A DNA stretch of 64,000 nucleotides from Macrostomum hystrix (taxonomy: Eukaryota; Animalia; Platyhelminthes): the NCBI GenBank assembly GCA_950097015.1, contig CATNEN010000001.1, positions 10,974,001-11,038,000 on the forward strand. The letters run 5' to 3'. How positions within the stretch are numbered: position 1 is the stretch's first letter; each line of letters starts with the position of its first letter. This document shows, piece by piece, positions 18,864 through 32,925 of this stretch. Under the pieces are notes generated by a model. The model had not been told where the DNA came from, did not search any database, and saw only the letters and a list, made by a program, of their open reading frames with translations. Made by a program: the position numbers and the translations under genes.

Positions 18864-19449
18864 TAAGTTCATAAGAACACCATAAATAAAAGTCAAACAA
18901 AAGTCGTTATGTTTTCACCGCTAAACTTGATTGCACTTTTTTAATCAAGGAATATAGTAGATAAAAGTGTAATTATTAGCATACATATCTGCTAAAAATT
19001 AATTTCAGGTTCGAGCTTAAATAGTTCATAATTCATAAAAAATGGTCAAAAAATCAACACTTAACTAAGCATATTGTACATAAATAAAAGATTATAAATC
19101 AACTAGATGGAAAGATATCAATTAGATATAAATTAACAAGAAATACAAAATATTGTAAATCAACAGGTAAGGCATCGTCAAAGCAATCGAATATGCAAAA
19201 AATATGCACAGTTTTGACAAAGAGAACAGTCTGCAAGAAATCTGAAGCCTCTAACATTTAGCAAATGCGCGAAAAACTACGTTATAAAGCCAGTCAGTCC
19301 GTATGGTTTGAGTTCATAAATATAAATATAAACAGCGACTTTGACAATTAAAAGAGTATTAAAAAACTATAAACAATTCATGATTGTAAATTGATTTCGT
19401 TTAGCATAAGCCAGAACTAAAAGGAGACAGAATTGAAAACTGTAATATA

Positions 19450-21325
19450 TAGGGATTGGAGGGCTGAGAGGAGCGAGTGTACATTGTGATCGATAGGGAT
19501 TGGAGGGCTGAGAGGAGCGAGTGTACATTGTGATCGATAGGGATTGGAGGGCTGAGAGGAGCGAGTGTACATTGTGATCGATAGGGATTGGAGGGCTGAG
19601 AGGAGCGAGTGTACATTGTGATCGATAGGGATTGGAGGGCTGAGAGGAGCGAGTGTACATTGTGATCGATAGGGATTGGAGGGCTGAGAGGAGCGAGTGT
19701 ACATTGTGATCGATAGGGATTGGAGGGCTGAGAGGAGCGAGTGTACATTGTGATCGATAGGGATTGGAGGGCTGAGAGGAGCGAGTGTACATTGTGATCG
19801 ATAGGGATTGGAGGGCTGAGGAGCGAGTGTACATTGTGATCGATAGGGATTGGAGGGCTGAGAGGAGCGAGTGTACATTGTGATCGATAGGGATTGGAGG
19901 GCTGAGAGGAGCGAGTGTACATTGTGATCGATAGGGATTGGAGGGCTGAGAGGAGCGAGTGTACATTGTGATCGATAGGGATTGGAGGGCTGAGAGGAGC
20001 GAGTGTACATTGTGATCGATAGGGATTGTAGGGCTGAGAGGAGCGAGTGTACATTGTGATCGATAGGGATTGGAGGGCTGAGAGGAGCGAGTGTACATTG
20101 TGATCGATAGGGATTGGAGGGCTGAGAGGAGCGAGTGTACATTGTGATCGATAGGGATTGGAGGGCTGAGAGGAGCGAGTGTACATTGTGATCGATAGGG
20201 ATTGGAGGGCTGAGAGGAGCGAGTGTACATTGTGATCGATAGGGATTGGAGGGCTGAGAGGAGCGAGTGTACATTGTGATCGATAGGGATTGGAGGGCTG
20301 AGAGGAGCGAGTGTACATTGTGATCGATGAAGATTGGAGGGCTGAGGAGCGAGTGTACATTGGGATCGATAGGGATTGGAGGGCTGAGGAGCGAGTGTAC
20401 ATTGGGATCGATGAAGATTGGAGGGCTGAGAGGAGCGAGTGTACATTGGGATCGATGAAGATTGGAGGGCTGAGAGGAGCGAGTGTACATTGGGATCGAT
20501 GAAGATTGGAGGGCTGAGAGGAGCGAGTGTACATTGGGATCGATAGGGATTGGAGGGCTGAGGAGCGAGTGTACATTGTGATCGATAGGGATTGGAGGGC
20601 TGAGGAGCGAGTGTACATTGTGATCGATAGGGATTGGAGGGCTGAGAGGAGCGAGTGTACATTGTGATCGATAGGGATTGGAGGGCTGAGAGGAGCGAGT
20701 GTACATTGTGATCGATAGGGATTGGAGGGCTGAGAGGAGCGAGTGTACATTGTGATCGATGAAGATTGGAGGGCTGAGGAGCGAGTGTACATTGGGATCG
20801 ATAGGGATTGGAGGGCTGAGAGGAGCGAGTGTACATTGGGATCGATGAAGATTGGAGGGCTGAGAGGAGCGAGTGTACATTGGGATCGATGAAGATTGGA
20901 GGGCTGAGAGGAGCGAGTGTACATTGGGATCGATAGGGATTGGAGGGCTGAGGAGCGAGTGTACATTGTGATCGATAGGGATTGGAGGGCTGAGGAGCGA
21001 GTGTACATTGTGATCGATAGGGATTGGAGGGCTGAGAGGAGCGAGTGTACATTGTGATCGATAGGGATTGGAGGGCTGAGAGGAGCGAGTGTACATTGTG
21101 ATCGATAGGGATTGGAGGGCTGAGAGGAGCGAGTGTACATTGTGATCGATGAAGATTGGAGGGCTGAGGAGCGAGTGTACATTGGGATCGATAGGGATTG
21201 GAGGGCTGAGAGGAGCGAGTCTACATTGGGATCGATAGGGATTGGAGGGCTGAGAGGAGCAAGTGTACATTGGGATCGTTAGGGATTGGAGGGCTAAGGA
21301 GCGAGTGTACATTGGGATCGATAGG
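19450..21325. repeat. 44/42-bp minisatellite (GATAGGGATTGGAGGGCTGAGAGGAGCGAGTGTACATTGTGATC)n downstream of the GT92 stop
   Basis: About 43 units with a higher-order pattern of variants. Confidence 0.95.
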
Positions 21326-21401
21326 TCGGGACAGTGTAAAATGTATCTAGTACTCGTGGTAGAAGCAATTCAACGAAATTCTCAAGACTTTAGCGCATAA
21401 A

Positions 21402-24400
21402 TCACAAGCAGATATCGACGCCAAACAGATTCTTGATTCGTTTCCTGGCGTCGCCAATGGCAGCAATAATCCCTGCCCTAAATGGATCAATAGAAGTGTC
21501 TTCAAGCATATCTCCAGCAGACCATTGGCGCATGTGGTGCAGCAGGCCTCCAGTGCTGGGGTCCAGCTGTTTGGTGCGACAATCATGCCAGCTCTTCCAA
21601 ACAAAATGAATGCCAATCTCTTTGATCTGTCTGGCCACCACTAGCAATTTGCTGCGCTCTGTGAATGGCAGCACAGCCTTGATGCGCTGCCGCCTGAGCA
21701 GGTTGGCGATCTGCAAGTCAAGGCGCATTGTCTGCGTGCAGGTCTTTGATCCAACCATGCTAAGTCCCAGATCCCACCATGCTAGTCCCAGATCCCACCA
21801 TGATAGTCCCAGATCCCACCATGATAGTCCCAGATCCCACCATGATAGTCCCAGATCCCACCATGCTATTCCCAGATCCCACCATGATAGTCCCAGATCC
21901 CACCATGATAGTCCCAGATCCCACCATGATAGTCCCAGATCCCACCATAATAGTCCCAGATCCCACCATGATAGTCCCAGATCCCACCATGATAGTCCCA
22001 GATCCAACCATGCTAAGTCCCAGATCCCACCATGCTAGTCCCAGATCCCACCATGGTAGTCCCAGATCCCACCATGCTATTCCCAGATCCCACCATGATA
22101 GTCCCAGATCCCACCATGATAGTCCCAGATCCCACCATGATAGTCCCAGATCCCACCATGCTATTCCCAGATCCCACCATGCTAGTCCCAGATCCCACCA
22201 TGCTATTCCCAGATCCCACCATGCTAGTCCCAGATCCCACCATGATAGTCCCAGATCCCACCATGCTATTCCCAGATCCCACCATGATAGTCCCAGATCC
22301 CACCATGCTAGTCCCAGATCCCACCATGCTATTCCCAGATCCCACCATGCTAGTCCCAGATCCCACCATGCTAGTCCCAGATCCCACCATGATAGTCCCA
22401 GATCCCACCATGATAGTCCCAGATCCCACCATGATAGTCCCAGATCCCACCATGATAGTCCCAGATCCCACCATGATAGTCCCAGATCCCACCATGATAG
22501 TCCCAGATCCCACCATAATAGTCCCAGATCCCACCATGATAGTCCCAGATCCCACCATGATAGTCCCAGATCCCACCATGCTAAGTCCCAGATCCCACCA
22601 TGCTAGTCCCAGATCCCACCATGCTAGTCCCAGATCCCACCATGCTATTCCCAGATCCCACCATGATAGTCCCAGATCCCACCATGATAGTCCCAGATCC
22701 CACCATGATAGTCCCAGATCCCACCATGATAGTCCCAGATCCCACCATGCTATTCCCAGATCCCACCATGCTAGTCCCAGATCCCACCATGCTAGTCCCA
22801 GATCCCACCATGATAGTCCCAGATCCCACCATGCTATTCCCAGATCCCACCATGATAGTCCCAGATCCCACCATGCTATTCCCAGATCCCACCATGCTAT
22901 TCCCAGATCCCACCATGCTAGTCCCAGATCCCACCGTGATAGTCCCAGATCCCACCATGCTAGTCCCAGATCCCACCATGCTATTCCCAGATCCCACCGT
23001 GATAGTCCCAGATCCCACCATGCTAATCCCAGATCCCACCATGCTAGTCCCAGATCCCACCATGCTATTCCCAGATCCCACCATGCTATTCCCAGATCCC
23101 ACCATGATAGTCCCAGATCCCACCATGATAGTCCCAGATCCCACCATGATAGTCCCAGATCCCACCATGATAGTCCCAGATCCCACCGTTATAGTCCCAG
23201 ATCCCACCATGATAGTCCCAGATCCCATGCTAGTCCCAGATCCCACCATGCTATTCCCAGATCCCACCGTGAATGTCCCAGATCCCATGCTAGTTCCAAA
23301 ATCCCACTAAGAGCTTACGATGATTGCGGGTTCAAAAATTACATGTCTCACCTTGCAGCCAGCAATATCGGCGGACAAGCCACCGGCCTCTTTAGAAGCT
23401 AAAGCAGCATTTGCAGCAGCACCCGGTGCCAGAGGCTGCTGCTGCTGCGGTGGAAAGACTCCATTGCGAAATCCCAAAGCACAGTAGCCTCCCATATCTT
23501 GAAGTGCATGAATTGTGGCGGCATTGCCCAGCGTTATAGCCTTCTGTTGTGGACCAACTGGCACAATGAATTCGTCAATGTCAATGAATGCAACCAGGCG
23601 ATATTTGTCTCTGGCTGAGTACAGACAGTCGTTCATGATCAGCATTTGGCCATGGTAGTGAATATCTTCGGTGTCAACCCCAGCAGCCAGAGACCAGGGA
23701 GTGAGACTGGCCCAGCCTAGACCAATGTAGTGCTTCAACACCCTGCTAGCGTGCATGGGCAGGCTCATGTTGTAAAAGAAGAAATGTTCCACACCCAGCA
23801 GGTGATTAACTTCAATGAATTCCACAAGGCGCATCGTGAATTGCATTTGTGTCTCCTCCTGGGCCACATAGCGCAGGGCGGTGATGCAAGCGGCTACACC
23901 GCTGCTGAAACCGGACACGTCAACCAATTGAACTGGCAAAGTCAGACTATTGCCTTTGGATCGGCTCGATGAAGCACCGTCGGCAGCTATTTGCACCTGG
24001 TAATAATTCGGATAATCGAATTTTACTGATGACGCTCCGCTATGTTTATTAATGAACTCTTTAGCAGGACAAAAGTACAACACGCCATCATAGGGCATTG
24101 AATGTCCTTCGTGCATTGCGTAATCATCCGCCAGCTGCCATTGCTGCTGTTGAATAACTAGAGCAGACTTACTACTAGTTAGTAGTAAGCAACAATGGAC
24201 TCTAGGCGGACTGGAAGATAAGCGATTGTTGAAATAGCCTACAATGACCACGGAGCCGAGGCTGGAGTCGTAGCGTGCTGAGAACAGAACAAGTAGAGGC
24301 TTGCCGCCAGGGCCGCTCAGCGCAACCCGAGGCTCGGGCTGCTTCGGTTGGAGCAGCAGCGCAGAGGATATTGTGACAGAGGAGACATTTGTGAGCAGCG

Positions 24401-24533
24401 GTGGCAGCGGAGGAATCGAATTGAAACTGTTAACGCTGACGAAATCGTAATGCAGGTACAGCAGATAGATTATGATGGAGGCAGCTAAAAACACGACTAG
24501 GAAAAGTACGCGCCTCCATTTTAGTGCTTTCAT
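21402..24533 (-). CDS. Glycosyltransferase family 92 (DUF23) type II Golgi protein; exons 24533-23352 and ~21743 (or 21710)-21402
   Basis: N-terminal signal anchor. Motifs LVEFIEVNHLLGVEHFFFYN, HYHGQMLIMNDCLY, VAFIDIDEFIVP (DxD), then RSKLLV, EIGIH and LLHHMR in exon 2. Donor AAG|GTGAGA is phase 0; several in-frame acceptors are possible. Confidence 0.88.
21745..23296. repeat. 21-bp minisatellite (CCCAGATCCCACCATGATAGT)n filling the GT92 intron
   Basis: About 73 units. Confidence 0.95.
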
Positions 24534-27572: not shown

Positions 27573-30500
27573 CTAAGAATTGGACTCAGGCCCAATAACT
27601 AAAGCGGACAGGGCGAACAATAGAAAGATCACGCCGCCGCACAGCGTGACAGTGCGCACCGAGATTCTTTGGGCTATGAATCGACCGCCCAGTACGGCCA
27701 GGCCAGTGCACAGGGCGTGGCCGAGAGTGCCGCCGACAATCACACCGACAACATCGTCTCTAGCGGCCAGAATTATAGTGGCAATCTGGGATCGATCGCC
27801 CCATTCAGCTAAGAATGTTAGCGTGAATGACTCAATCAGCACTTTGCTAACCACATTGTAGATGAAGGAGCGTCGGGGACTGCGAATAACGCCAGTCTCC
27901 GCGTCCTGTTCGGTGGCAGCAGCCTGGGATTTGCAATATTCTTCGTCGCGTTTCTTTAAATCGGCCTGCACCTCTTCGTATTCTTCTAGGCCCTCGTCCG
28001 GCTTCATATAATAGCCTTCGCGCAGCATCTTTAAGCCGAAGATGGCGAATAGGGCGCTGCTAACATAGTAGGTGAACCAGCGCGGAATGACTGTGGTGGC
28101 ATAGCCCAACACGGCCGATAGGATAGTCATTGTGGCCAGGGCTAGGATGGCTCCGGTGAATACAACCAGCCTGGAGTGCCGCATAGCCATGATGGCGGCA
28201 ATGAAGAAGGTTTTATCGCCTAGCTCGGATACAATGATAACAGACAGGCTGGCTAGGAATGCGTGGATGAAGCCGAAGCGAGAATTCGACGATTCGATTG
28301 AGCCAGCCTTTGGATCGCCCTTTAGGTAGCGCTGTGCACAAGAGATGAGGAGAGGTAGATATTAGAAATTGTCTGTCACTGTAGCAGATTAATAATAACA
28401 TAATAATAATTGCAGGAGGGATGCGGGCAATGACACATTATTTGGTGACACTAGACCCGCAGCCAGCGAGGAGGCAATTCTGCCCATTCCGCTGACTGCT
28501 AAGCACACACGCACATAGGTGTACATCTGCCCTGACTTTCTCATCGTCAGGAAGTGCACACTCTCACTGTGTCTTGGAGGTTGGCTCTAAAGGGCGTAAA
28601 TTGCGCGACTGAGCCTAAAATGAATGCGGTCTCGCCGCGGAATCGAGCTCGGGGACCTTGGTGTGAGAGGCAAACACTTTAGACAGCTCTGTCACTTATC
28701 CCCTCTGTAAGCAGATTGGTAGATGAATTAAATCATTTAATATGGATTTCCATTCGTGACTGTGTAACAAAAAAATCTGGAAGGCAAAATATTATTTTTC
28801 CGATTGTGTCAGATTAATTTTATACTGTTATAATGTGGGATGATGCCCTTTTTACAAAAGTAAAGCTGGCCTTTGTATTTTTGTGCAGAAGATTAGGACA
28901 AGAAAATGACAATCATAAAATATAGTTCAGAATTGTTTTCGTATTTAAAATCAGGTGAGATTCTACAATTTTGATAAAAATAAAGAATGCAAGAAAAATA
29001 TCTAGCAAGCCAAACTATATGTTGAAGTAGAAAACTAGTAATTAAAAAACTGGATAAAAGACAAGAGTATTTATGACTAATAATAAGAAAAAGAAAATTG
29101 AGTCTCTCTCTGCCGTCTGAATTGGTGAGTCTTTAGAACAATGGCTCCAAAGCGAACAATAGAAAGAACAGACCGCCGCAAAATGTGACCAGGCGAACAG
29201 ACAGTCGCTTAGCAACTAGACTGCCGCACAGGACAGCCAAACCGGTGCATAGGGCGTGGCCAATAGTGCCGCCGACAATCACGCCGACGGTGCTGTCTCT
29301 GGCGGAGAGCAGCAGAGCGGACGCCTGCGATCTATCGCCCCATTCGGCTAGGAAAGTGAGCACGAACGACTCAACTAGAGCGGATCTGTTGCTGTGCTTA
29401 GATTGGCGCAGGTCTAGTTCAGCCTCGCGCCACTCTTTCATAGCCTTGCCTGGCGACATTCGCCAAGCTTGCAGCAATAGGCTAATGCCGAATATAGTGA
29501 ATATGATAATGCCTATAGCGGCTATGCACCAGTGGGGCAGGCGGCCGAGTCCACTAAACAGGTAGCCTAGGCCAGCTGAGATCACATTAATGCCAGCCTC
29601 AGCTGCTAGGGAGCCAGAAAACACAGCTAGTTTGGCATTGTGTTTGACAGCCAATAGGCAGGCTAAGAAGAATGTGTTGTCGCCGATTTCCGAGACAGCG
29701 ATGGCTGAAGCGGCGGACAGAGCTGCTGAGATGATCGACTGGTGCTCAGACTGACAACGATTTAAGCAGCAACAGAGGAGAGGTTGACAACAGAAAAGGG
29801 GAAACACCTTGCTTTAAACAGCACGATTCTCACACCAACAAACACAGACAAGGAACTAAGTAGTTACTGTCTACTGTGTGCAACTGATGTCGCTTGCACT
29901 ATTCTTTAGAAAATTAAGAAAATCCCAATATAAATCGCCAGATATCAGTGGGTGGGTATGATAGGTTGATCTGAGGGTGAGGCTGGTGAATCAGTGGGTG
30001 AGGCTGGTGAATCTGAGGGTGAGGCTGGTGAATCAGTGGGTGAGGCTGGTGAATCAGTGGGTGAGGCTGGTGGGTCTGTGGGTGAGGCTGGTGAATCATA
30101 GAGTGAGGCTGATTGGTCTGTGGGTGAGGCTGATGAATCTGTGGGTGAGGCTGATGAATCTGTGGGTGAGGCTGGTGAATCAGTGGGTGAGGCTGGTGAA
30201 TCAGTGGGTGAGGCTTGTGAATCAGTGGGTGAGGCTGGTGAATCAGTGGGTGAGACTGGTGAATCAGTGGGTGAGGCTGGTGAATCAGTGGGTGAGGCTT
30301 GTGAATCAGTGGGTGAGGCTGGTGAATCAGTGGGTGAGACTGGTGAATCAGTGGGTGAGGCTGCTGAATCAGTGGGTGAGACTGGTGAATCAGTGGGTGA
30401 GACTGGTGAATCAGTGGGTGAGGCTGCTGAATCAGTGGGTGAGACTGGTGAATCAGTGGGTGAGACTGGTGAATCAGTGGGTGAGACTGGTGAATCAGTG

Positions 30501-32925
30501 GGTGAGGCTGGTGAATCAGTGGGTGAGGCTTGTGAATCAGTGGGTGAGGCTGGTGAATCAGTGGGTGAGACTGGTGAATCAGTGGGTGAGGCTGCTGAAT
30601 CAGTGGGTGAGACTGGTGAATCAGTGGGTGAGACTGGTGAATCAGTGGGTGAGGCTGCTGAATCAGTGGGTGAGACTGGTGAATCAGTGGGTGAGACTGG
30701 TGAATCAGTGGGTGAGGCTTGTAAATGTTTGTATGTGAGGGAAAAGTTTGTAATTTTGTAATTGTGTACATTTTTGTAAATTTATCTTGATCAAAAAACT
30801 CAACTGCCAAGGGGCAAAAATAATTTATTTTGTAGCTGACACCACAAAGCAGAACATAGGTTTAGTCAATAAGTATTTATTATCAAGTAAATAGAAAAAT
30901 AATATACTAATAATATAAAAAAAATATTTATTATGACGCTATTGATCATGGAAATGACAGTCACTAGATATATGAGAGATTAATAAGAAATAAGAAATTA
31001 TTTTGTCCTAATCAATCACTGACCTATGAACATTGATATAATTTATGCCAAGAAACCATTATTTCATAGTCTTTAGATTGTTTTTGAGAGTGTTCAAGAT
31101 ACACTGTTGGTGGCACACTATTGTTAGAACCTGCACACTTCTATGATGTTGCCTTTGTACTATCTAAATATATTTTATAGCATATTTTTGGCAGTGTTAT
31201 AAAGCAACAGCAAGTCCTATAAAGTTGATAGTCATAGTCAGGAGTACATAAAAGTTGGGATAAAAAATACAAGTACAAAAAACAAGGAAATTAAGCATTT
31301 ATTATATAAACAAACATACATGCGCAACCTCCCAAATCTTAAGCCGGCCATGCAACTTAGTTTTTGCTCTATTTACGACTTAGTTTGCTCTCATTTGCGA
31401 CGTAGTTTGTTTCAGTGCTCTATTTATGACTTAGTTTGCTCTCATTTGCTCTCTTTTTCTCTCCCTTTTTTCCTTTTCTTCATGCCTTCCTTTTTTGTCC
31501 CTTGGCCCCCCTTTGATTTTTTTGTGCTTGGTTGATTGGTTTTTGCCACATACCTTGCTTGGCCCTTGTTTCACCCAGCCGGCCAGGTGTTGCGCATGTA
31601 TGTAAACAAAGCCAAAATATGAATGTCTTTTAACATTTCAGATGAATCAACTAACTGTAAAACTCTATCAATGTTGAAGAGAAACATATTATACATCATT
31701 ATACTATTATACTAATTTGAAAGTTGAATAAATTATCTGCAAGCTGAGGCATGATATGCAATGAAGCATTAAAGGGAAAGAAAGATATTGATGTTTCAGC
31801 AGAAATTTTTATCACAAAAGCATACTTTTTAACAGCGTTTTTTCAGTATATACTTTAGACGAAGATTGTATGTGGTTGCTTTCCAATTAAATTACCATAA
31901 ATGTAGTTATTTATACAGCATGAAAAATGCTTTCAAATGACATAATTCATGATAGATCACTCTTTAAAATAAGATTAAACCACTCACTCAAATTTTAAAA
32001 CCGAACATCAAATTCTCTGTTTGGTTTGAAGATACATGAAAATCATTGTTTGGTTTTAGATGAAAAACATGAATAACTTTTTTCTATTTGACAAAATTGC
32101 AAAAGCAGATACTATTTAGAAAGACAAAACTGTTTTCTATAACTTGGCTTTTGATTTATCATGATATCTTAAATAGAGAATCTGTAGCTTAGGTTTGAAG
32201 TTAAAAAAATGCATATTCTTGTTCGGTTGATGATACATTACCCGATTTAATTAATTCTTTATAAGTGTGCATAGTTAAAATGGAAGGCTGTTTTTTAGCA
32301 TATTTAGGTGAAAAAATAGTTGTCACCAATCTGACTAATTGTGTCACTGAAATGACTGTCACCAAAATGTCTTGTCACCGAAATGACCTGGGACCAAAAA
32401 CTACAAATTTGAATCAAATAGTTCACATTTGTCTACATATATATGAAGTTCAATACCATGACTAAGAAATAAAAAACCAAATTAGCAATTAGTAATTACC
32501 CATCTCAATATTTAAATTAGGCAAAACATTAGGAGACATTAAGGAGGTTATAGTTGAAATTTATATTATTGTATATTGAGGAGATCATGACATAAAAAGA
32601 CCCTGATATGCAGTCTTGACTTCTATACAAAGTAAAAATAATGCGTTAAACAGCACCAAATAATAATTAAATAGAAACCATAGAAATGAGTAATAAAATG
32701 GAAGAAAAACTAACTTACTTCTGCTTTCTCATTTGCTTTCAGGGCATTCTTAATTTTGTTTTTGACATTGTAGAAAAAAGAGTTTGCCTCGGACTTTGTA
32801 TCTTCTTGCTTGTCACTGTTTTGAGAACCTTTGTCATTTTCTTTGGCTTTAACATGGGATATGATAGAAACAAGAAATAAGGCTGTTATCAGAACTACAA
32901 CAGCGCGACGAAAGTAACACACCAT
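27573..32925 (-). CDS. TMEM165: TMEM165/GDT1 Golgi Ca2+/Mn2+ transporter (exon 1 32925-32719; canonical exon 2 28331-27573; ~321 aa)
   Basis: Exon 1 encodes a signal peptide (MVCYFRRAVVVLITALFLVSIISHVKA) and ends at the donor GAA|GTAAGT. Exon 2 follows the acceptor CACAG| and encodes IVSELGDKTFFIAAIMAMRH, an acidic loop and LAEWGDRSQ. The join is phase 0. Confidence 0.92.
28391..28704 (-). mobile_element. tRNA-derived SINE family 2, copy C (TMEM165 intron)
   Basis: Same body and (ATT)n tail as copies A and B. Confidence 0.8.
29133..29750 (-). CDS. Second, divergent GDT1/TMEM165 membrane-domain exon (alternative terminal exon nested in the TMEM165 intron)
   Basis: Intact frame with EIGDNT and EWGDRS motifs. 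It is preceded by a pyrimidine tract and a phase-0 acceptor TTGTCAG|TCT, and has no ATG of its own ahead of the domain. Confidence 0.8.
   Translation of the reverse strand, partial: SEHQSIISAALSAASAIAVSEIGDNTFFLACLLAVKHNAKLAVFSGSLAAEAGINVISAGLGYLFSGLGRLPHWCIAAIGIIIFTIFGISLLLQAWRMSPGKAMKEWREAELDLRQSKHSNRSALVESFVLTFLAEWGDRSQASALLLSARDSTVGVIVGGTIGHALCTGLAVLCGSLVAKRLSVRLVTFCGGLFFLLFALEPLF
29975..30722. repeat. 21-bp minisatellite (TGGGTGAGGCTGGTGAATCAG)n
   Basis: About 35 units in the TMEM165 intron. Confidence 0.95.
31315..31602. mobile_element. hAT-type MITE (14-bp TIR, 8-bp TSD)
   Basis: TIR CATACATGCGCAAC / GTTGCGCATGTATG. TSD TAAACAAA at 31307-31314 and 31603-31610. Confidence 0.9.
31968..32245 (+). 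repeat. Dispersed repeat, second copy at ~58960-59150
   Basis: Shared AATAAGATT.AACCACTCACTCAAATT.TAAAACCGAACA..TTTGGTTTGAAGATACATGAAAA and ATCTGTAGCTTAGGTTTGAAGT...GATGATACATTACCC. Confidence 0.75.

What the first reader, a model, noticed from the sequence alone, without database searches (positions are those of the whole stretch)
27573..32925. One signal-peptide exon, two complete GDT1/TMEM165 transporter bodies: mutually exclusive duplicated terminal exons
Seen: exon 1 (32925-32719, signal peptide plus luminal segment) ends in a phase-0 GTAAGT donor. Downstream on the same strand are two intact exons, each encoding the full two-repeat GDT1 membrane domain. The proximal exon (29750-29133) has a pyrimidine tract and a phase-0 TTGTCAG acceptor. 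The distal exon (28331-27573) has a phase-0 CACAG acceptor. The proximal exon has no start codon of its own: the track's GTG start lies in the pyrimidine tract, with an in-frame TAA just upstream. It can therefore be expressed only by splicing to a leader exon, most simply exon 1. Known: GDT1/UPF0016 proteins are Golgi Ca2+/Mn2+ transporters, usually single-copy in animals. Inference: one promoter makes two transporter isoforms (~274 and ~321 aa) through alternative 3' exon or poly(A) choice.
Basis: partly seen in the sequence, partly recalled or inferred. Interest (0 to 1): 0.82.

Follow-up and report, generated by a model that had tools for sequence, protein, structure and literature searches.

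The report
Second transporter gene nested in TMEM165
In the flatworm Macrostomum hystrix, the only intron of the Golgi calcium/manganese transporter gene TMEM165 holds a second, very divergent but intact copy of the transporter with no start codon, which must get one by splicing, either from the shared first exon or from the spliced leader that ends in AUG.

Summary
On the minus strand there is a leader exon (32925-32719, GTAAGT donor) and two complete two-repeat GDT1 bodies: proximal 29750-29133 and distal 28331-27573.

- **Organism:** the assembly size and contig count match Macrostomum hystrix exactly.
- **Distal body:** exon 1 plus the distal body is the TMEM165 orthologue. The M. lignano protein shows the same junction.
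- **Proximal body:** it is only 44% identical to the distal body, and no protein in the 15-billion-protein collection searched is more than 47% identical to it. It looks like selected coding sequence. Synonymous sites are saturated but the frame is open, second codon positions and hydropathy are conserved, the acidic cation-site tetrad is intact, and the AlphaFold pLDDT is 90. Its first repeat is remodelled: EIGDNT, a Glu in TM2, and a loop 29 residues shorter.
the claim that it can be expressed only through exon 1 overlooks flatworm biology. The M. hystrix spliced leader ends in ATG. Trans-splicing at the same phase-0 acceptor would give a leaderless 206-aa protein whose Met falls exactly where the most similar short "GDNT" homologues start.

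I slightly favour the trans-spliced route. Cis-splicing from exon 1 is a near-equal rival and may coexist with it. No RNA data were reachable, so the route stays open. The scan had already noted spliced-leader-donated start codons elsewhere in this genome. Interest is moderate.

The parts
32719..32925 (-). Exon 1 of the TMEM165 orthologue: ATG, signal peptide and luminal linker (69 aa), ending in phase 0 before a GTAAGT donor (32718-32713).
   Evidence: It is 65% identical to residues 26-73 of M. lignano P0002, which continues directly into the distal-type body.
29751..29806 (-). Pyrimidine tract and 3' splice site (...TTGTCAG) of the proximal body. It is phase 0 with respect to both the exon 1 donor and a spliced-leader AUG.
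   Evidence: It partly fits the M. lignano trans-acceptor motif [T/C]TNCAG; position -5 is G.
29133..29750 (-). Proximal GDT1 body: 205 codons plus TAA, no usable ATG. It is a divergent paralogue with EIGDNT in motif 1, Glu51 and Ile54 in TM2, an intact EWGDRSQ motif 2, and a central loop 29 aa shorter.
   Evidence: Pfam PF01169 x2. 44% identical to the distal body. Selection tests. Conserved-column audit 54/74. AF2 pLDDT 90.3.
28332..29132 (-). Spacer between the two bodies. It would be the 3' UTR and poly(A) region of the proximal body and the last part of the intron for the distal one. It has no AATAAA; ATTAAA lies 392 nt after the stop. A GC-rich block of unknown nature lies at about 28400-28700.
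27573..28331 (-). Distal GDT1 body: 252 codons plus TAG, after a ...GTGCACAG acceptor. This is the conserved TMEM165 orthologue exon.
   Evidence: 92% identical to M. lignano P0002 and 70-76% to annelid and nemertean TMEM165. It keeps 74/74 family-conserved columns.
29975..30726 (.). 21-bp minisatellite (36 copies) inside the intron, about 225 bp upstream of the proximal acceptor. Probably not coding.
   Evidence: ORFs are open in several frames only because of the repeat. No Pfam match.

Best explanation
The locus is the M. hystrix TMEM165 orthologue (exon 1 plus the distal exon). A second complete GDT1-type transporter body is nested, on the same strand, in its single intron. Selection has kept this nested body as coding sequence, but its first repeat and central loop are remodelled. 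Shown: it has no start codon and begins at a phase-0 3' splice site, so its AUG must arrive by splicing. Inferred, and slightly favoured: the supplier is the spliced leader, whose last three bases are AUG. Trans-splicing at 29751|29750 would give a leaderless 206-aa protein starting M-SEHQS. That protein would insert through its first membrane helix as a signal anchor and act as a variant Golgi/ER cation-proton exchanger. Its altered cation site (Lys to Asn in motif 1, an extra Glu in TM2) and shortened regulatory loop would change its properties. Cis-splicing of exon 1 to the same acceptor may occur on transcripts from the TMEM165 promoter and may coexist with the trans route.
For: Organism and leader: the assembly size and contig count equal M. 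hystrix. The 35-nt leader ending in ATG is present in 23 or more exact copies, followed by GTAAG in an SL RNA gene. The M. hystrix transcriptome-derived leader also ends in ATG. About 20% of genes are trans-spliced. Use of the leader AUG as initiator is established in flatworms.
Frame and N-terminus: the acceptor is in phase 0. In BLASTP and MAFFT alignments the Met of the most similar short homologues falls exactly in the slot before proximal residue 1. These are Physella acuta TMEM165-like (220 aa) and Logan P0296. They have no leader and share GDNT, a polar residue at the Glu51 column, an MSxxKA..E..EA short loop and AKR(I/L)SVR.
A leaderless form is viable: human delta78-TMEM165 is Golgi-localised, correctly oriented and partly functional.
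Selected coding sequence: pS 0.66 against pN 0.19 in the C half and 0.42 in the N half. Codon-position identity is 0.64/0.92/0.53 in the C half. Under neutral drift to the observed amino-acid divergence, P(no stop) is about 0.003. Hydropathy at replaced N-half residues correlates at r 0.52 against 0.12 +/- 0.13 under neutral drift. GC3 is 0.60 against 0.30-0.41 in the introns. The acidic tetrad and T/F/S/Q neighbours are kept. AF2 gives pLDDT 90.3 with the family's broken TM1 and TM4.
No other leader exon or second copy of exon 1 lies in the intron.
Against: No transcript data could be reached, so neither junction was seen. A strong donor (exon 1) lies upstream in cis. By the rule cited (Conrad et al. 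1993), that favours cis-splicing on host transcripts. The acceptor does not match the [T/C]TNCAG trans-acceptor motif at position -5, though only 44% of M. lignano sites match it. The simplest origin, a tandem duplicate of the terminal exon, would start life as an alternative terminal exon of exon 1. The register match with the short homologues could be coincidence or shared ancestry, and the phylogeny is unresolved. No clear poly(A) signal follows the stop. No proximal-type protein is annotated in M. lignano.
Confidence: 0.42

Rival explanations
1. One reading: exon 1 is cis-spliced either to the proximal or to the distal body. One promoter and one signal peptide then serve two alternative terminal exons, giving 274-aa and 321-aa proteins, with little or no trans-splicing at the proximal acceptor.
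For: The body lies on the same strand inside the intron. The donor GAA|GTAAGT is strong, and the first downstream acceptor has a good pyrimidine tract and a compatible phase. An upstream cis donor normally wins over the spliced leader. Tandem duplication of a terminal exon gives this architecture at once, which explains how the copy stayed under selection. The C half of the proximal body matches Macrostomum TMEM165 best: 0.70 and 0.68 against at most 0.65 elsewhere. The AU test does not reject a Macrostomum-specific duplication, p 0.18. Flatworm acceptors are often shared between cis- and trans-splicing.
Against: The proximal exon lacks the first 16 codons of the distal exon and starts just 5 residues before TM1. 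That is where leaderless homologues start. The model does not predict this trimming, though it allows it. The M. lignano annotation shows only the exon 1 to distal product. There is no canonical poly(A) signal close to the stop. There are no transcript data.
Confidence: 0.36
2. The proximal body is a recently inactivated or never-expressed duplicate (pseudo-exon) whose open frame is a leftover.
For: It has no start codon of its own and an extremely long branch in trees. It has lost 20 of 74 family-conserved residues, including the motif-1 Lys. No orthologue appears in any protein collection. The poly(A) signal is weak.
Against: Neutral drift to the observed divergence leaves an open 205-codon frame in only about 0.3% of simulations, even ignoring indels. 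All indels are in frame. Second codon positions are 92% conserved in the C half while third positions are saturated. Replacements in the N half keep hydropathy, p about 0.001. GC3 has not decayed toward intron composition. The changes are patterned (cation-site neighbours and loop) and recur in independent short homologues. Only very recent death cannot be excluded.
Confidence: 0.12
3. The proximal body has its own unrecognised upstream coding exon, or starts at a non-AUG codon such as the GTG at 29807.
For: The ORF stays open for 19 codons upstream of the acceptor.
Against: No ATG-started segment with a decent phase-0 donor (5 codons or more, at least 7 of 9 consensus positions) lies between 29751 and 32718. 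There is no second copy of exon 1 in the window. The 19 upstream codons are simply the pyrimidine tract (MFPLFCCQPLLCCCLNRCQ) and an in-frame TAA precedes them.
Confidence: 0.05

Closest known systems
TMEM165 / Gdt1 (UPF0016, CaCA2, Pfam PF01169) Golgi Ca2+/Mn2+-proton exchangers
   Same: Both bodies have the two-repeat architecture. The distal one is a textbook orthologue. The proximal one keeps the acidic tetrad (human E108, D111, E248, D251), T113, F114, S253, Q254 and the broken TM1/TM4 helices.
   Different: The proximal body has Asn for the motif-1 Lys/Arg, Glu at human L137 and Ile at M140 in TM2, a loop 29 aa shorter and no leader of its own. It is at most 47% identical to any known protein.
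Short leaderless 'GDNT' TMEM165-like proteins (Physella acuta XP_059178426, 220 aa; two unnamed metagenome/Logan proteins)
   Same: They share the same start position, GDNT, a polar residue at the Glu51 column, the short MSxxKA..E..EA loop and similar length.
   Different: They are only 38-44% identical. The Physella gene has its own ATG and lies on a different contig from Physella TMEM165. Common ancestry is neither shown nor rejected. A profile search found no further members.
Flatworm genes that take their initiator Met from the spliced leader's 3'-terminal AUG (Cheng et al. 2006, J Biol Chem 281:733)
   Same: The first coding exon has no ATG and starts at an in-frame acceptor, in an animal whose leader ends in AUG.
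   Different: Here the acceptor lies inside another gene's intron, downstream of a strong cis donor. Use of the leader at this site was not observed.
Shared 5' exon with alternative complete downstream units: the cholinergic locus (unc-17/VAChT nested in the first intron of cha-1/ChAT) and alternative 3' terminal exon genes such as lola and mod(mdg4) (my own knowledge, not tested here)
   Same: One upstream exon and donor, with two downstream alternative terminal coding units on the same strand.
   Different: In the cholinergic locus the shared exon is non-coding and the two products are unrelated. Here the shared exon would encode the signal peptide and the two bodies are paralogues. Known TMEM165 isoforms in moths differ only in the first exon and a loop cassette.

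Membership tests
GDT1/UPF0016 (PF01169) transporter family, proximal body | Two PF01169 repeats above the Pfam gathering score | tested here: met
   123.4 bits against a cut-off of 27, two stretches.
GDT1/UPF0016 (PF01169) transporter family, proximal body | Two E-phi-G-D-[KR]-[ST] motifs | tested here: inconclusive
   Motif 2 (EWGDRS) is met. Motif 1 is EIGDNT, with Asn instead of Lys/Arg. Asn occurs in 6 of 350 aligned homologues and Glu in 6 others. The four acidic residues are all present.
GDT1/UPF0016 (PF01169) transporter family, proximal body | Six-helix inverted-repeat fold with broken TM1 and TM4 | tested here: met
   AF2 with a 60-sequence alignment gives pLDDT 90.3 and pTM 0.83, with helix breaks at IGD and WGD. 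Caveat: the alignment drives the model. No solved structure of the family is available for comparison.
GDT1/UPF0016 (PF01169) transporter family, proximal body | Ca2+/Mn2+ transport activity | not testable with these tools
   Needs complementation of gdt1-delta yeast or TMEM165-KO cells.
TMEM165 orthologue, exon 1 plus distal body | Best matches are animal TMEM165, all conserved columns kept, same exon junction as the congener | tested here: met
   92% identical to M. lignano P0002 with the junction KANEKAE|RYLKGD, and 74/74 conserved columns kept.
Alternative 3' terminal exons sharing one 5' exon | Upstream donor and both acceptors phase-compatible with consensus signals | tested here: met
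Alternative 3' terminal exons sharing one 5' exon | A separate poly(A) site after the proximal exon | tested here: inconclusive
   There is no AATAAA. ATTAAA lies at +392 and weaker variants lie nearer. The distal exon likewise has only ATTAAA, at +208 and +251.
Alternative 3' terminal exons sharing one 5' exon | Transcripts with both junctions | not testable with these tools
M. hystrix is not in the protein collections. The paper supplements hold no data for this locus.
Spliced-leader-AUG-dependent flatworm gene | The organism's leader ends in AUG, with functional SL RNA genes | tested here: met
Spliced-leader-AUG-dependent flatworm gene | ATG-less first coding exon beginning at an acceptor in frame with the leader AUG, rebuilding a homologous N-terminus | tested here: met
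   Phase 0. The Met slot equals Met1 of Physella P0219 and Logan P0296.
Spliced-leader-AUG-dependent flatworm gene | Acceptor lies in an outron, with no cis donor upstream in the primary transcript | tested here: inconclusive
   The condition fails on transcripts from the TMEM165 promoter, because the exon 1 donor lies 2968 nt upstream. It would be met only with an intronic promoter, which cannot be tested here.
Spliced-leader-AUG-dependent flatworm gene | Leader-bearing reads at the acceptor | not testable with these tools
   No RNA data were reachable.

The most novel reading that the evidence does not exclude
On each primary transcript of this one transcription unit, the proximal acceptor is used either by the exon 1 donor or by the spliced leader, or it is skipped for the distal acceptor. 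The outcome would be two paralogous cation transporters: the housekeeping TMEM165, and a leaderless or signal-peptide-bearing variant with a remodelled cation site whose start codon is supplied in trans. The variant would also belong to a so far undescribed, recurrently evolving subclass of GDT1 proteins (no leader, short loop, Lys to Asn in motif 1, polar or acidic residue in TM2) with altered selectivity or regulation.
Probability: 0.25. Interest if true: 0.6.

Novelty: new variant of a known kind. Interest (0 to 1): 0.4.

Why it matters
TMEM165/Gdt1 is the Golgi manganese/calcium exchanger whose loss causes a human glycosylation disorder, and no experimental structure of the family was found. 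This locus offers a natural variant that keeps the acidic cage but changes three things: the motif-1 lysine, which a published model pairs with the regulatory loop; the length of that loop; and a TM2 position next to the cation site, which becomes a glutamate. The same combination appears in a snail paralogue. Comparing the two Macrostomum proteins in yeast or knockout cells could show what these elements do. For genome annotation, the case shows that an 'exon without a start codon' in a flatworm has two legitimate sources of an AUG. Nested genes of this kind are easily mis-modelled as isoforms or missed altogether.

Tried and rejected
**Routes that were closed or empty**
- The look-up of encoding contigs (for the M. 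lignano locus of P0002 and for transcripts) was closed. I could not test synteny or dN/dS of the proximal body in another Macrostomum species, or look at RNA contigs.
- Three searches of the 5.8-billion-protein collection and one search of the 15-billion-protein representatives found no orthologue of the proximal body. M. hystrix itself is absent from these collections, because neither body found itself, so this says little about expression.
- Paper supplements (M. lignano transcriptome, trans-splicing paper, M. hystrix genome paper) hold no entry for TMEM165/GDT1.
- Rfam and tRNA scans of the locus found nothing.

**Hypotheses tested**
- Recent gene conversion as the reason for the conserved C half: rejected, because pS is 0.59 there.
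- A second leader exon or a relic of exon 1 in the intron: none found. DNA similarity between the two copies is limited to 223 nt of coding sequence, so the duplication boundaries are erased.
- Poly(A) signals are uninformative.
- Phylogeny could not decide between a Macrostomum-specific duplicate and an old 'short GDNT' subfamily, because of long-branch effects. Support is 78/99 for the first without the short proteins, the proximal body groups with the short proteins when they are added, and the AU test gives p 0.18.
- Moth TMEM165 isoforms were checked as a possible precedent for alternative bodies. They differ only in the first exon and a loop cassette.

All searches were done exon by exon.


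Full report
**What is there.**
- Exon 1 (32925-32719) starts with ATG and encodes 69 residues: a signal peptide and a hydrophilic linker. It ends in phase 0 before GTAAGT.
- The proximal block (29750-29133) follows a long pyrimidine tract and TTGTCAG. It is open for 205 codons and ends in TAA. Its only upstream 'start' is a GTG inside the pyrimidine tract, preceded by an in-frame TAA, and its first ATG is at codon 98.
- The distal block (28331-27573) follows GTGCACAG and is open for 252 codons.
- Each block contains both repeats of Pfam PF01169 (GDT1), at E 4.7e-36 and 4e-46.
- The two blocks are GC-rich islands (0.54) in AT-rich surroundings (0.30-0.41).
- They are the only GDT1 matches in the whole assembly.

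**Whose genome.** The assembly has 220,453,370 bases in 42 contigs. These are exactly the figures published for Macrostomum hystrix (PMC10468722). The best protein match of the distal block is a Macrostomum lignano protein (P0002, 324 aa, 92% identical). That protein reads ...KANEKAE|RYLKGD.... This is the exon 1 to distal junction, and its leader is 65% identical to exon 1. The distal block also keeps all 74 columns that are at least 85% conserved among 350 homologues. Exon 1 plus the distal block is the ordinary TMEM165 orthologue.

**The proximal block is old, divergent and selected.**
- It is 44% identical to the distal block, with 37% in the first repeat and 70% in the second.
- No protein in the 5.8-billion-protein collection or the 15-billion-protein representative set is more than 47% identical to it.
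- Synonymous sites between the two blocks are saturated in both halves (pS 0.71 and 0.59), so the better-conserved C half is not due to recent gene conversion.
- Non-synonymous differences are far fewer (pN 0.42 and 0.19). In the C half the codon positions are 64%, 92% and 53% identical.
- I simulated neutral decay of the distal sequence under intron base composition, stopping at the observed amino-acid divergence. A 205-codon frame stayed open in about 0.3% of runs, before counting indels. All real indels are in frame.
- In the poorly conserved N half, replaced residues keep their hydropathy: r 0.52 against 0.12 +/- 0.13 in stop-free neutral simulations of equal identity, p about 0.001.
- GC3 is 0.60, like the distal block (0.63) and unlike the introns.
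- AlphaFold2 with a 60-sequence alignment gives pLDDT 90.3 and pTM 0.83, with TM1 and TM4 broken at IGD and WGD as in the published TMEM165 model. This model leans on the alignment.

A long-dead pseudo-exon is therefore very unlikely. Very recent inactivation cannot be excluded.

**What has changed in it.** The proximal block keeps 54 of the 74 conserved columns.
- It retains the four acidic residues of the proposed cation cage (human E108, D111, E248, D251) and T113, F114, S253 and Q254, all reported as functionally important.
- It retains the two loop glutamates (human E189, E192).
- Motif 1 reads EIGDNT, so the Lys/Arg has become Asn. In the published model this lysine pairs with E189 and E192 of the cytosolic loop.
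- In TM2, the Leu at human position 137 is Glu, and the Met at 140 is Ile. Residue 140 is the one whose Arg substitution reaches the cation site in that model. These positions are assigned by a constant offset from the motif.
- The central loop is 29 residues shorter.
- My inference is that the coupling between loop and site, and possibly ion selectivity, have changed.

**A small set of look-alikes.** Six of 350 homologues also have GDNT.
- Three are short and leaderless: Physella acuta 'transmembrane protein 165-like' (220 aa, three XP accessions), one JGI metagenome protein and one Logan protein.
- These three also share a polar residue (Gln, Asn, Asn) at the Glu51 column, the short MSxxKA..E..EA loop and AKR(I/L)SVR.
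- A profile built from the four sequences finds no more members.
- In trees the proximal branch is extremely long. Without the short proteins it sits with Macrostomum TMEM165 (78/99). With them it sits among them with negligible support. An AU test does not reject a Macrostomum-specific origin, p 0.18.
- The C half is most similar to the Macrostomum orthologues: 0.70 and 0.68 against at most 0.65 elsewhere.
- Physical adjacency favours a local tandem duplication of the body exon, followed by convergence on the short type. An old subfamily is not excluded.

**How it can be expressed.** The block needs an imported AUG.
- Its 35-nt spliced leader ends in ATG (PMC8629364).
- That exact sequence occurs at least 23 times in this assembly, partly in arrays.
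- In an SL RNA gene it is followed by GTAAG.
- The leader assembled from M. hystrix transcripts also ends in ATG.
- About 20% of M. hystrix genes are trans-spliced.
- Flatworm leader AUGs are documented initiator codons: in frame in 28% of trans-spliced Schistosoma mRNAs and required by more than 40 cDNAs (Cheng et al. 2006, as summarised).
- Earlier notes of this scan report such genes elsewhere in this genome. I reached the idea before reading them and did not re-check their cases.

The proximal acceptor is in phase 0 for the leader AUG as well. The product would be M-SEHQSIIS..., 206 aa. In both MAFFT and BLASTP alignments, the initiator Met of the Physella and Logan short proteins falls exactly in that slot. 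The proximal exon lacks the first 16 codons of the distal exon and starts five residues before the TM1 helix. A recent preprint shows that human TMEM165 lacking only its signal peptide is misoriented. The delta78 form, which starts shortly before TM1, is Golgi-localised, correctly oriented and partly functional. A short N-tail is what a leaderless version needs.

**The case for the cis route.**
- A strong donor lies upstream in cis, and such donors normally outcompete the leader.
- The acceptor misses the trans-acceptor motif at position -5.
- A tandem duplicate of a terminal exon is born as an alternative terminal exon.
- Flatworm acceptors are often used both ways, sometimes through alternative promoters.
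- No other leader exon or relic of exon 1 lies in the intron.
- Poly(A) signals do not discriminate between the routes.

**Verdict.** I give the trans-spliced, leaderless product 0.42, the purely cis-spliced alternative terminal exon 0.36, a pseudo-exon 0.12 and other starts 0.05. The first two may coexist.

**Limits.**
- M. hystrix is not in the protein collections.
- The paper supplements have nothing on this locus.
- No junction was therefore observed, and no second Macrostomum genome could be compared.

**Comparison with what is known.** GDT1 transporters, leader-donated start codons, nested same-strand genes and alternative terminal exons are each known. Annotated TMEM165 isoforms, for example in Spodoptera, differ only in the first exon and a loop cassette. 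What is new is the combination. A complete, fast-evolving paralogue sits inside the parent gene's only intron, has no ATG, and carries a patterned remodelling of the cation site that recurs in a snail paralogue. This is a new variant of known kinds and of moderate interest.

Noticed in passing
window 29975-30726: A 21-bp minisatellite of 36 copies at 92% match, strongly C-rich on the gene strand. It lies about 225 bp upstream of the proximal acceptor. It creates long ORFs in several frames that are not coding.
   Followed up: partly
window 31314-31603: A MITE-like 290-bp element with perfect 15-nt terminal inverted repeats (ACATACATGCGCAAC) inside the TMEM165 intron.
   Followed up: no
window 28400-28700: A GC-rich block (0.45-0.48) in the AT-rich spacer between the two bodies. 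It looks like an inserted repeat. ARAGORN finds no tRNA and Rfam finds no match.
   Followed up: partly
window 23307-24533 (-): The next gene downstream on the same strand encodes a type II membrane protein with a glycosyltransferase family 92 domain (PF01697, E 2.4e-24). This is a Golgi glycosyltransferase next to the Golgi Mn2+/Ca2+ exchanger. From my own knowledge, GT92 enzymes such as C. elegans GALT-1 need Mn2+.
   Followed up: no
window 19367-23400: Several kilobases of minisatellite arrays give 200-630-aa repeat ORFs on both strands.
   Followed up: no
G000 C15, C17, C42 (e.g. L008 1501-1535): Spliced-leader RNA genes lie in tandem arrays with about 11.6-kb spacing. Many diverged leader-like copies are scattered over the genome: 149 matches with up to 3 mismatches, including a roughly 927-bp-spaced array of a 3-mismatch variant on C39.
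   Followed up: no
proteins P0219, P0227, P0296 (not in the window): A sporadic group of short, leaderless GDT1 proteins (Physella acuta and two environmental or Logan sequences). They have GDNT in motif 1, a polar residue in TM2 and a short loop. I did not look for a description of this subclass in the literature.
   Followed up: partly
proteins P0026, P0028, P0029, P0081 (Spodoptera frugiperda): Annotated moth TMEM165 isoforms use alternative first exons (one with a signal peptide, one without) and skip a 52-aa cassette in the central loop. The leader and the loop are therefore the variable parts of this protein elsewhere too.
   Followed up: partly
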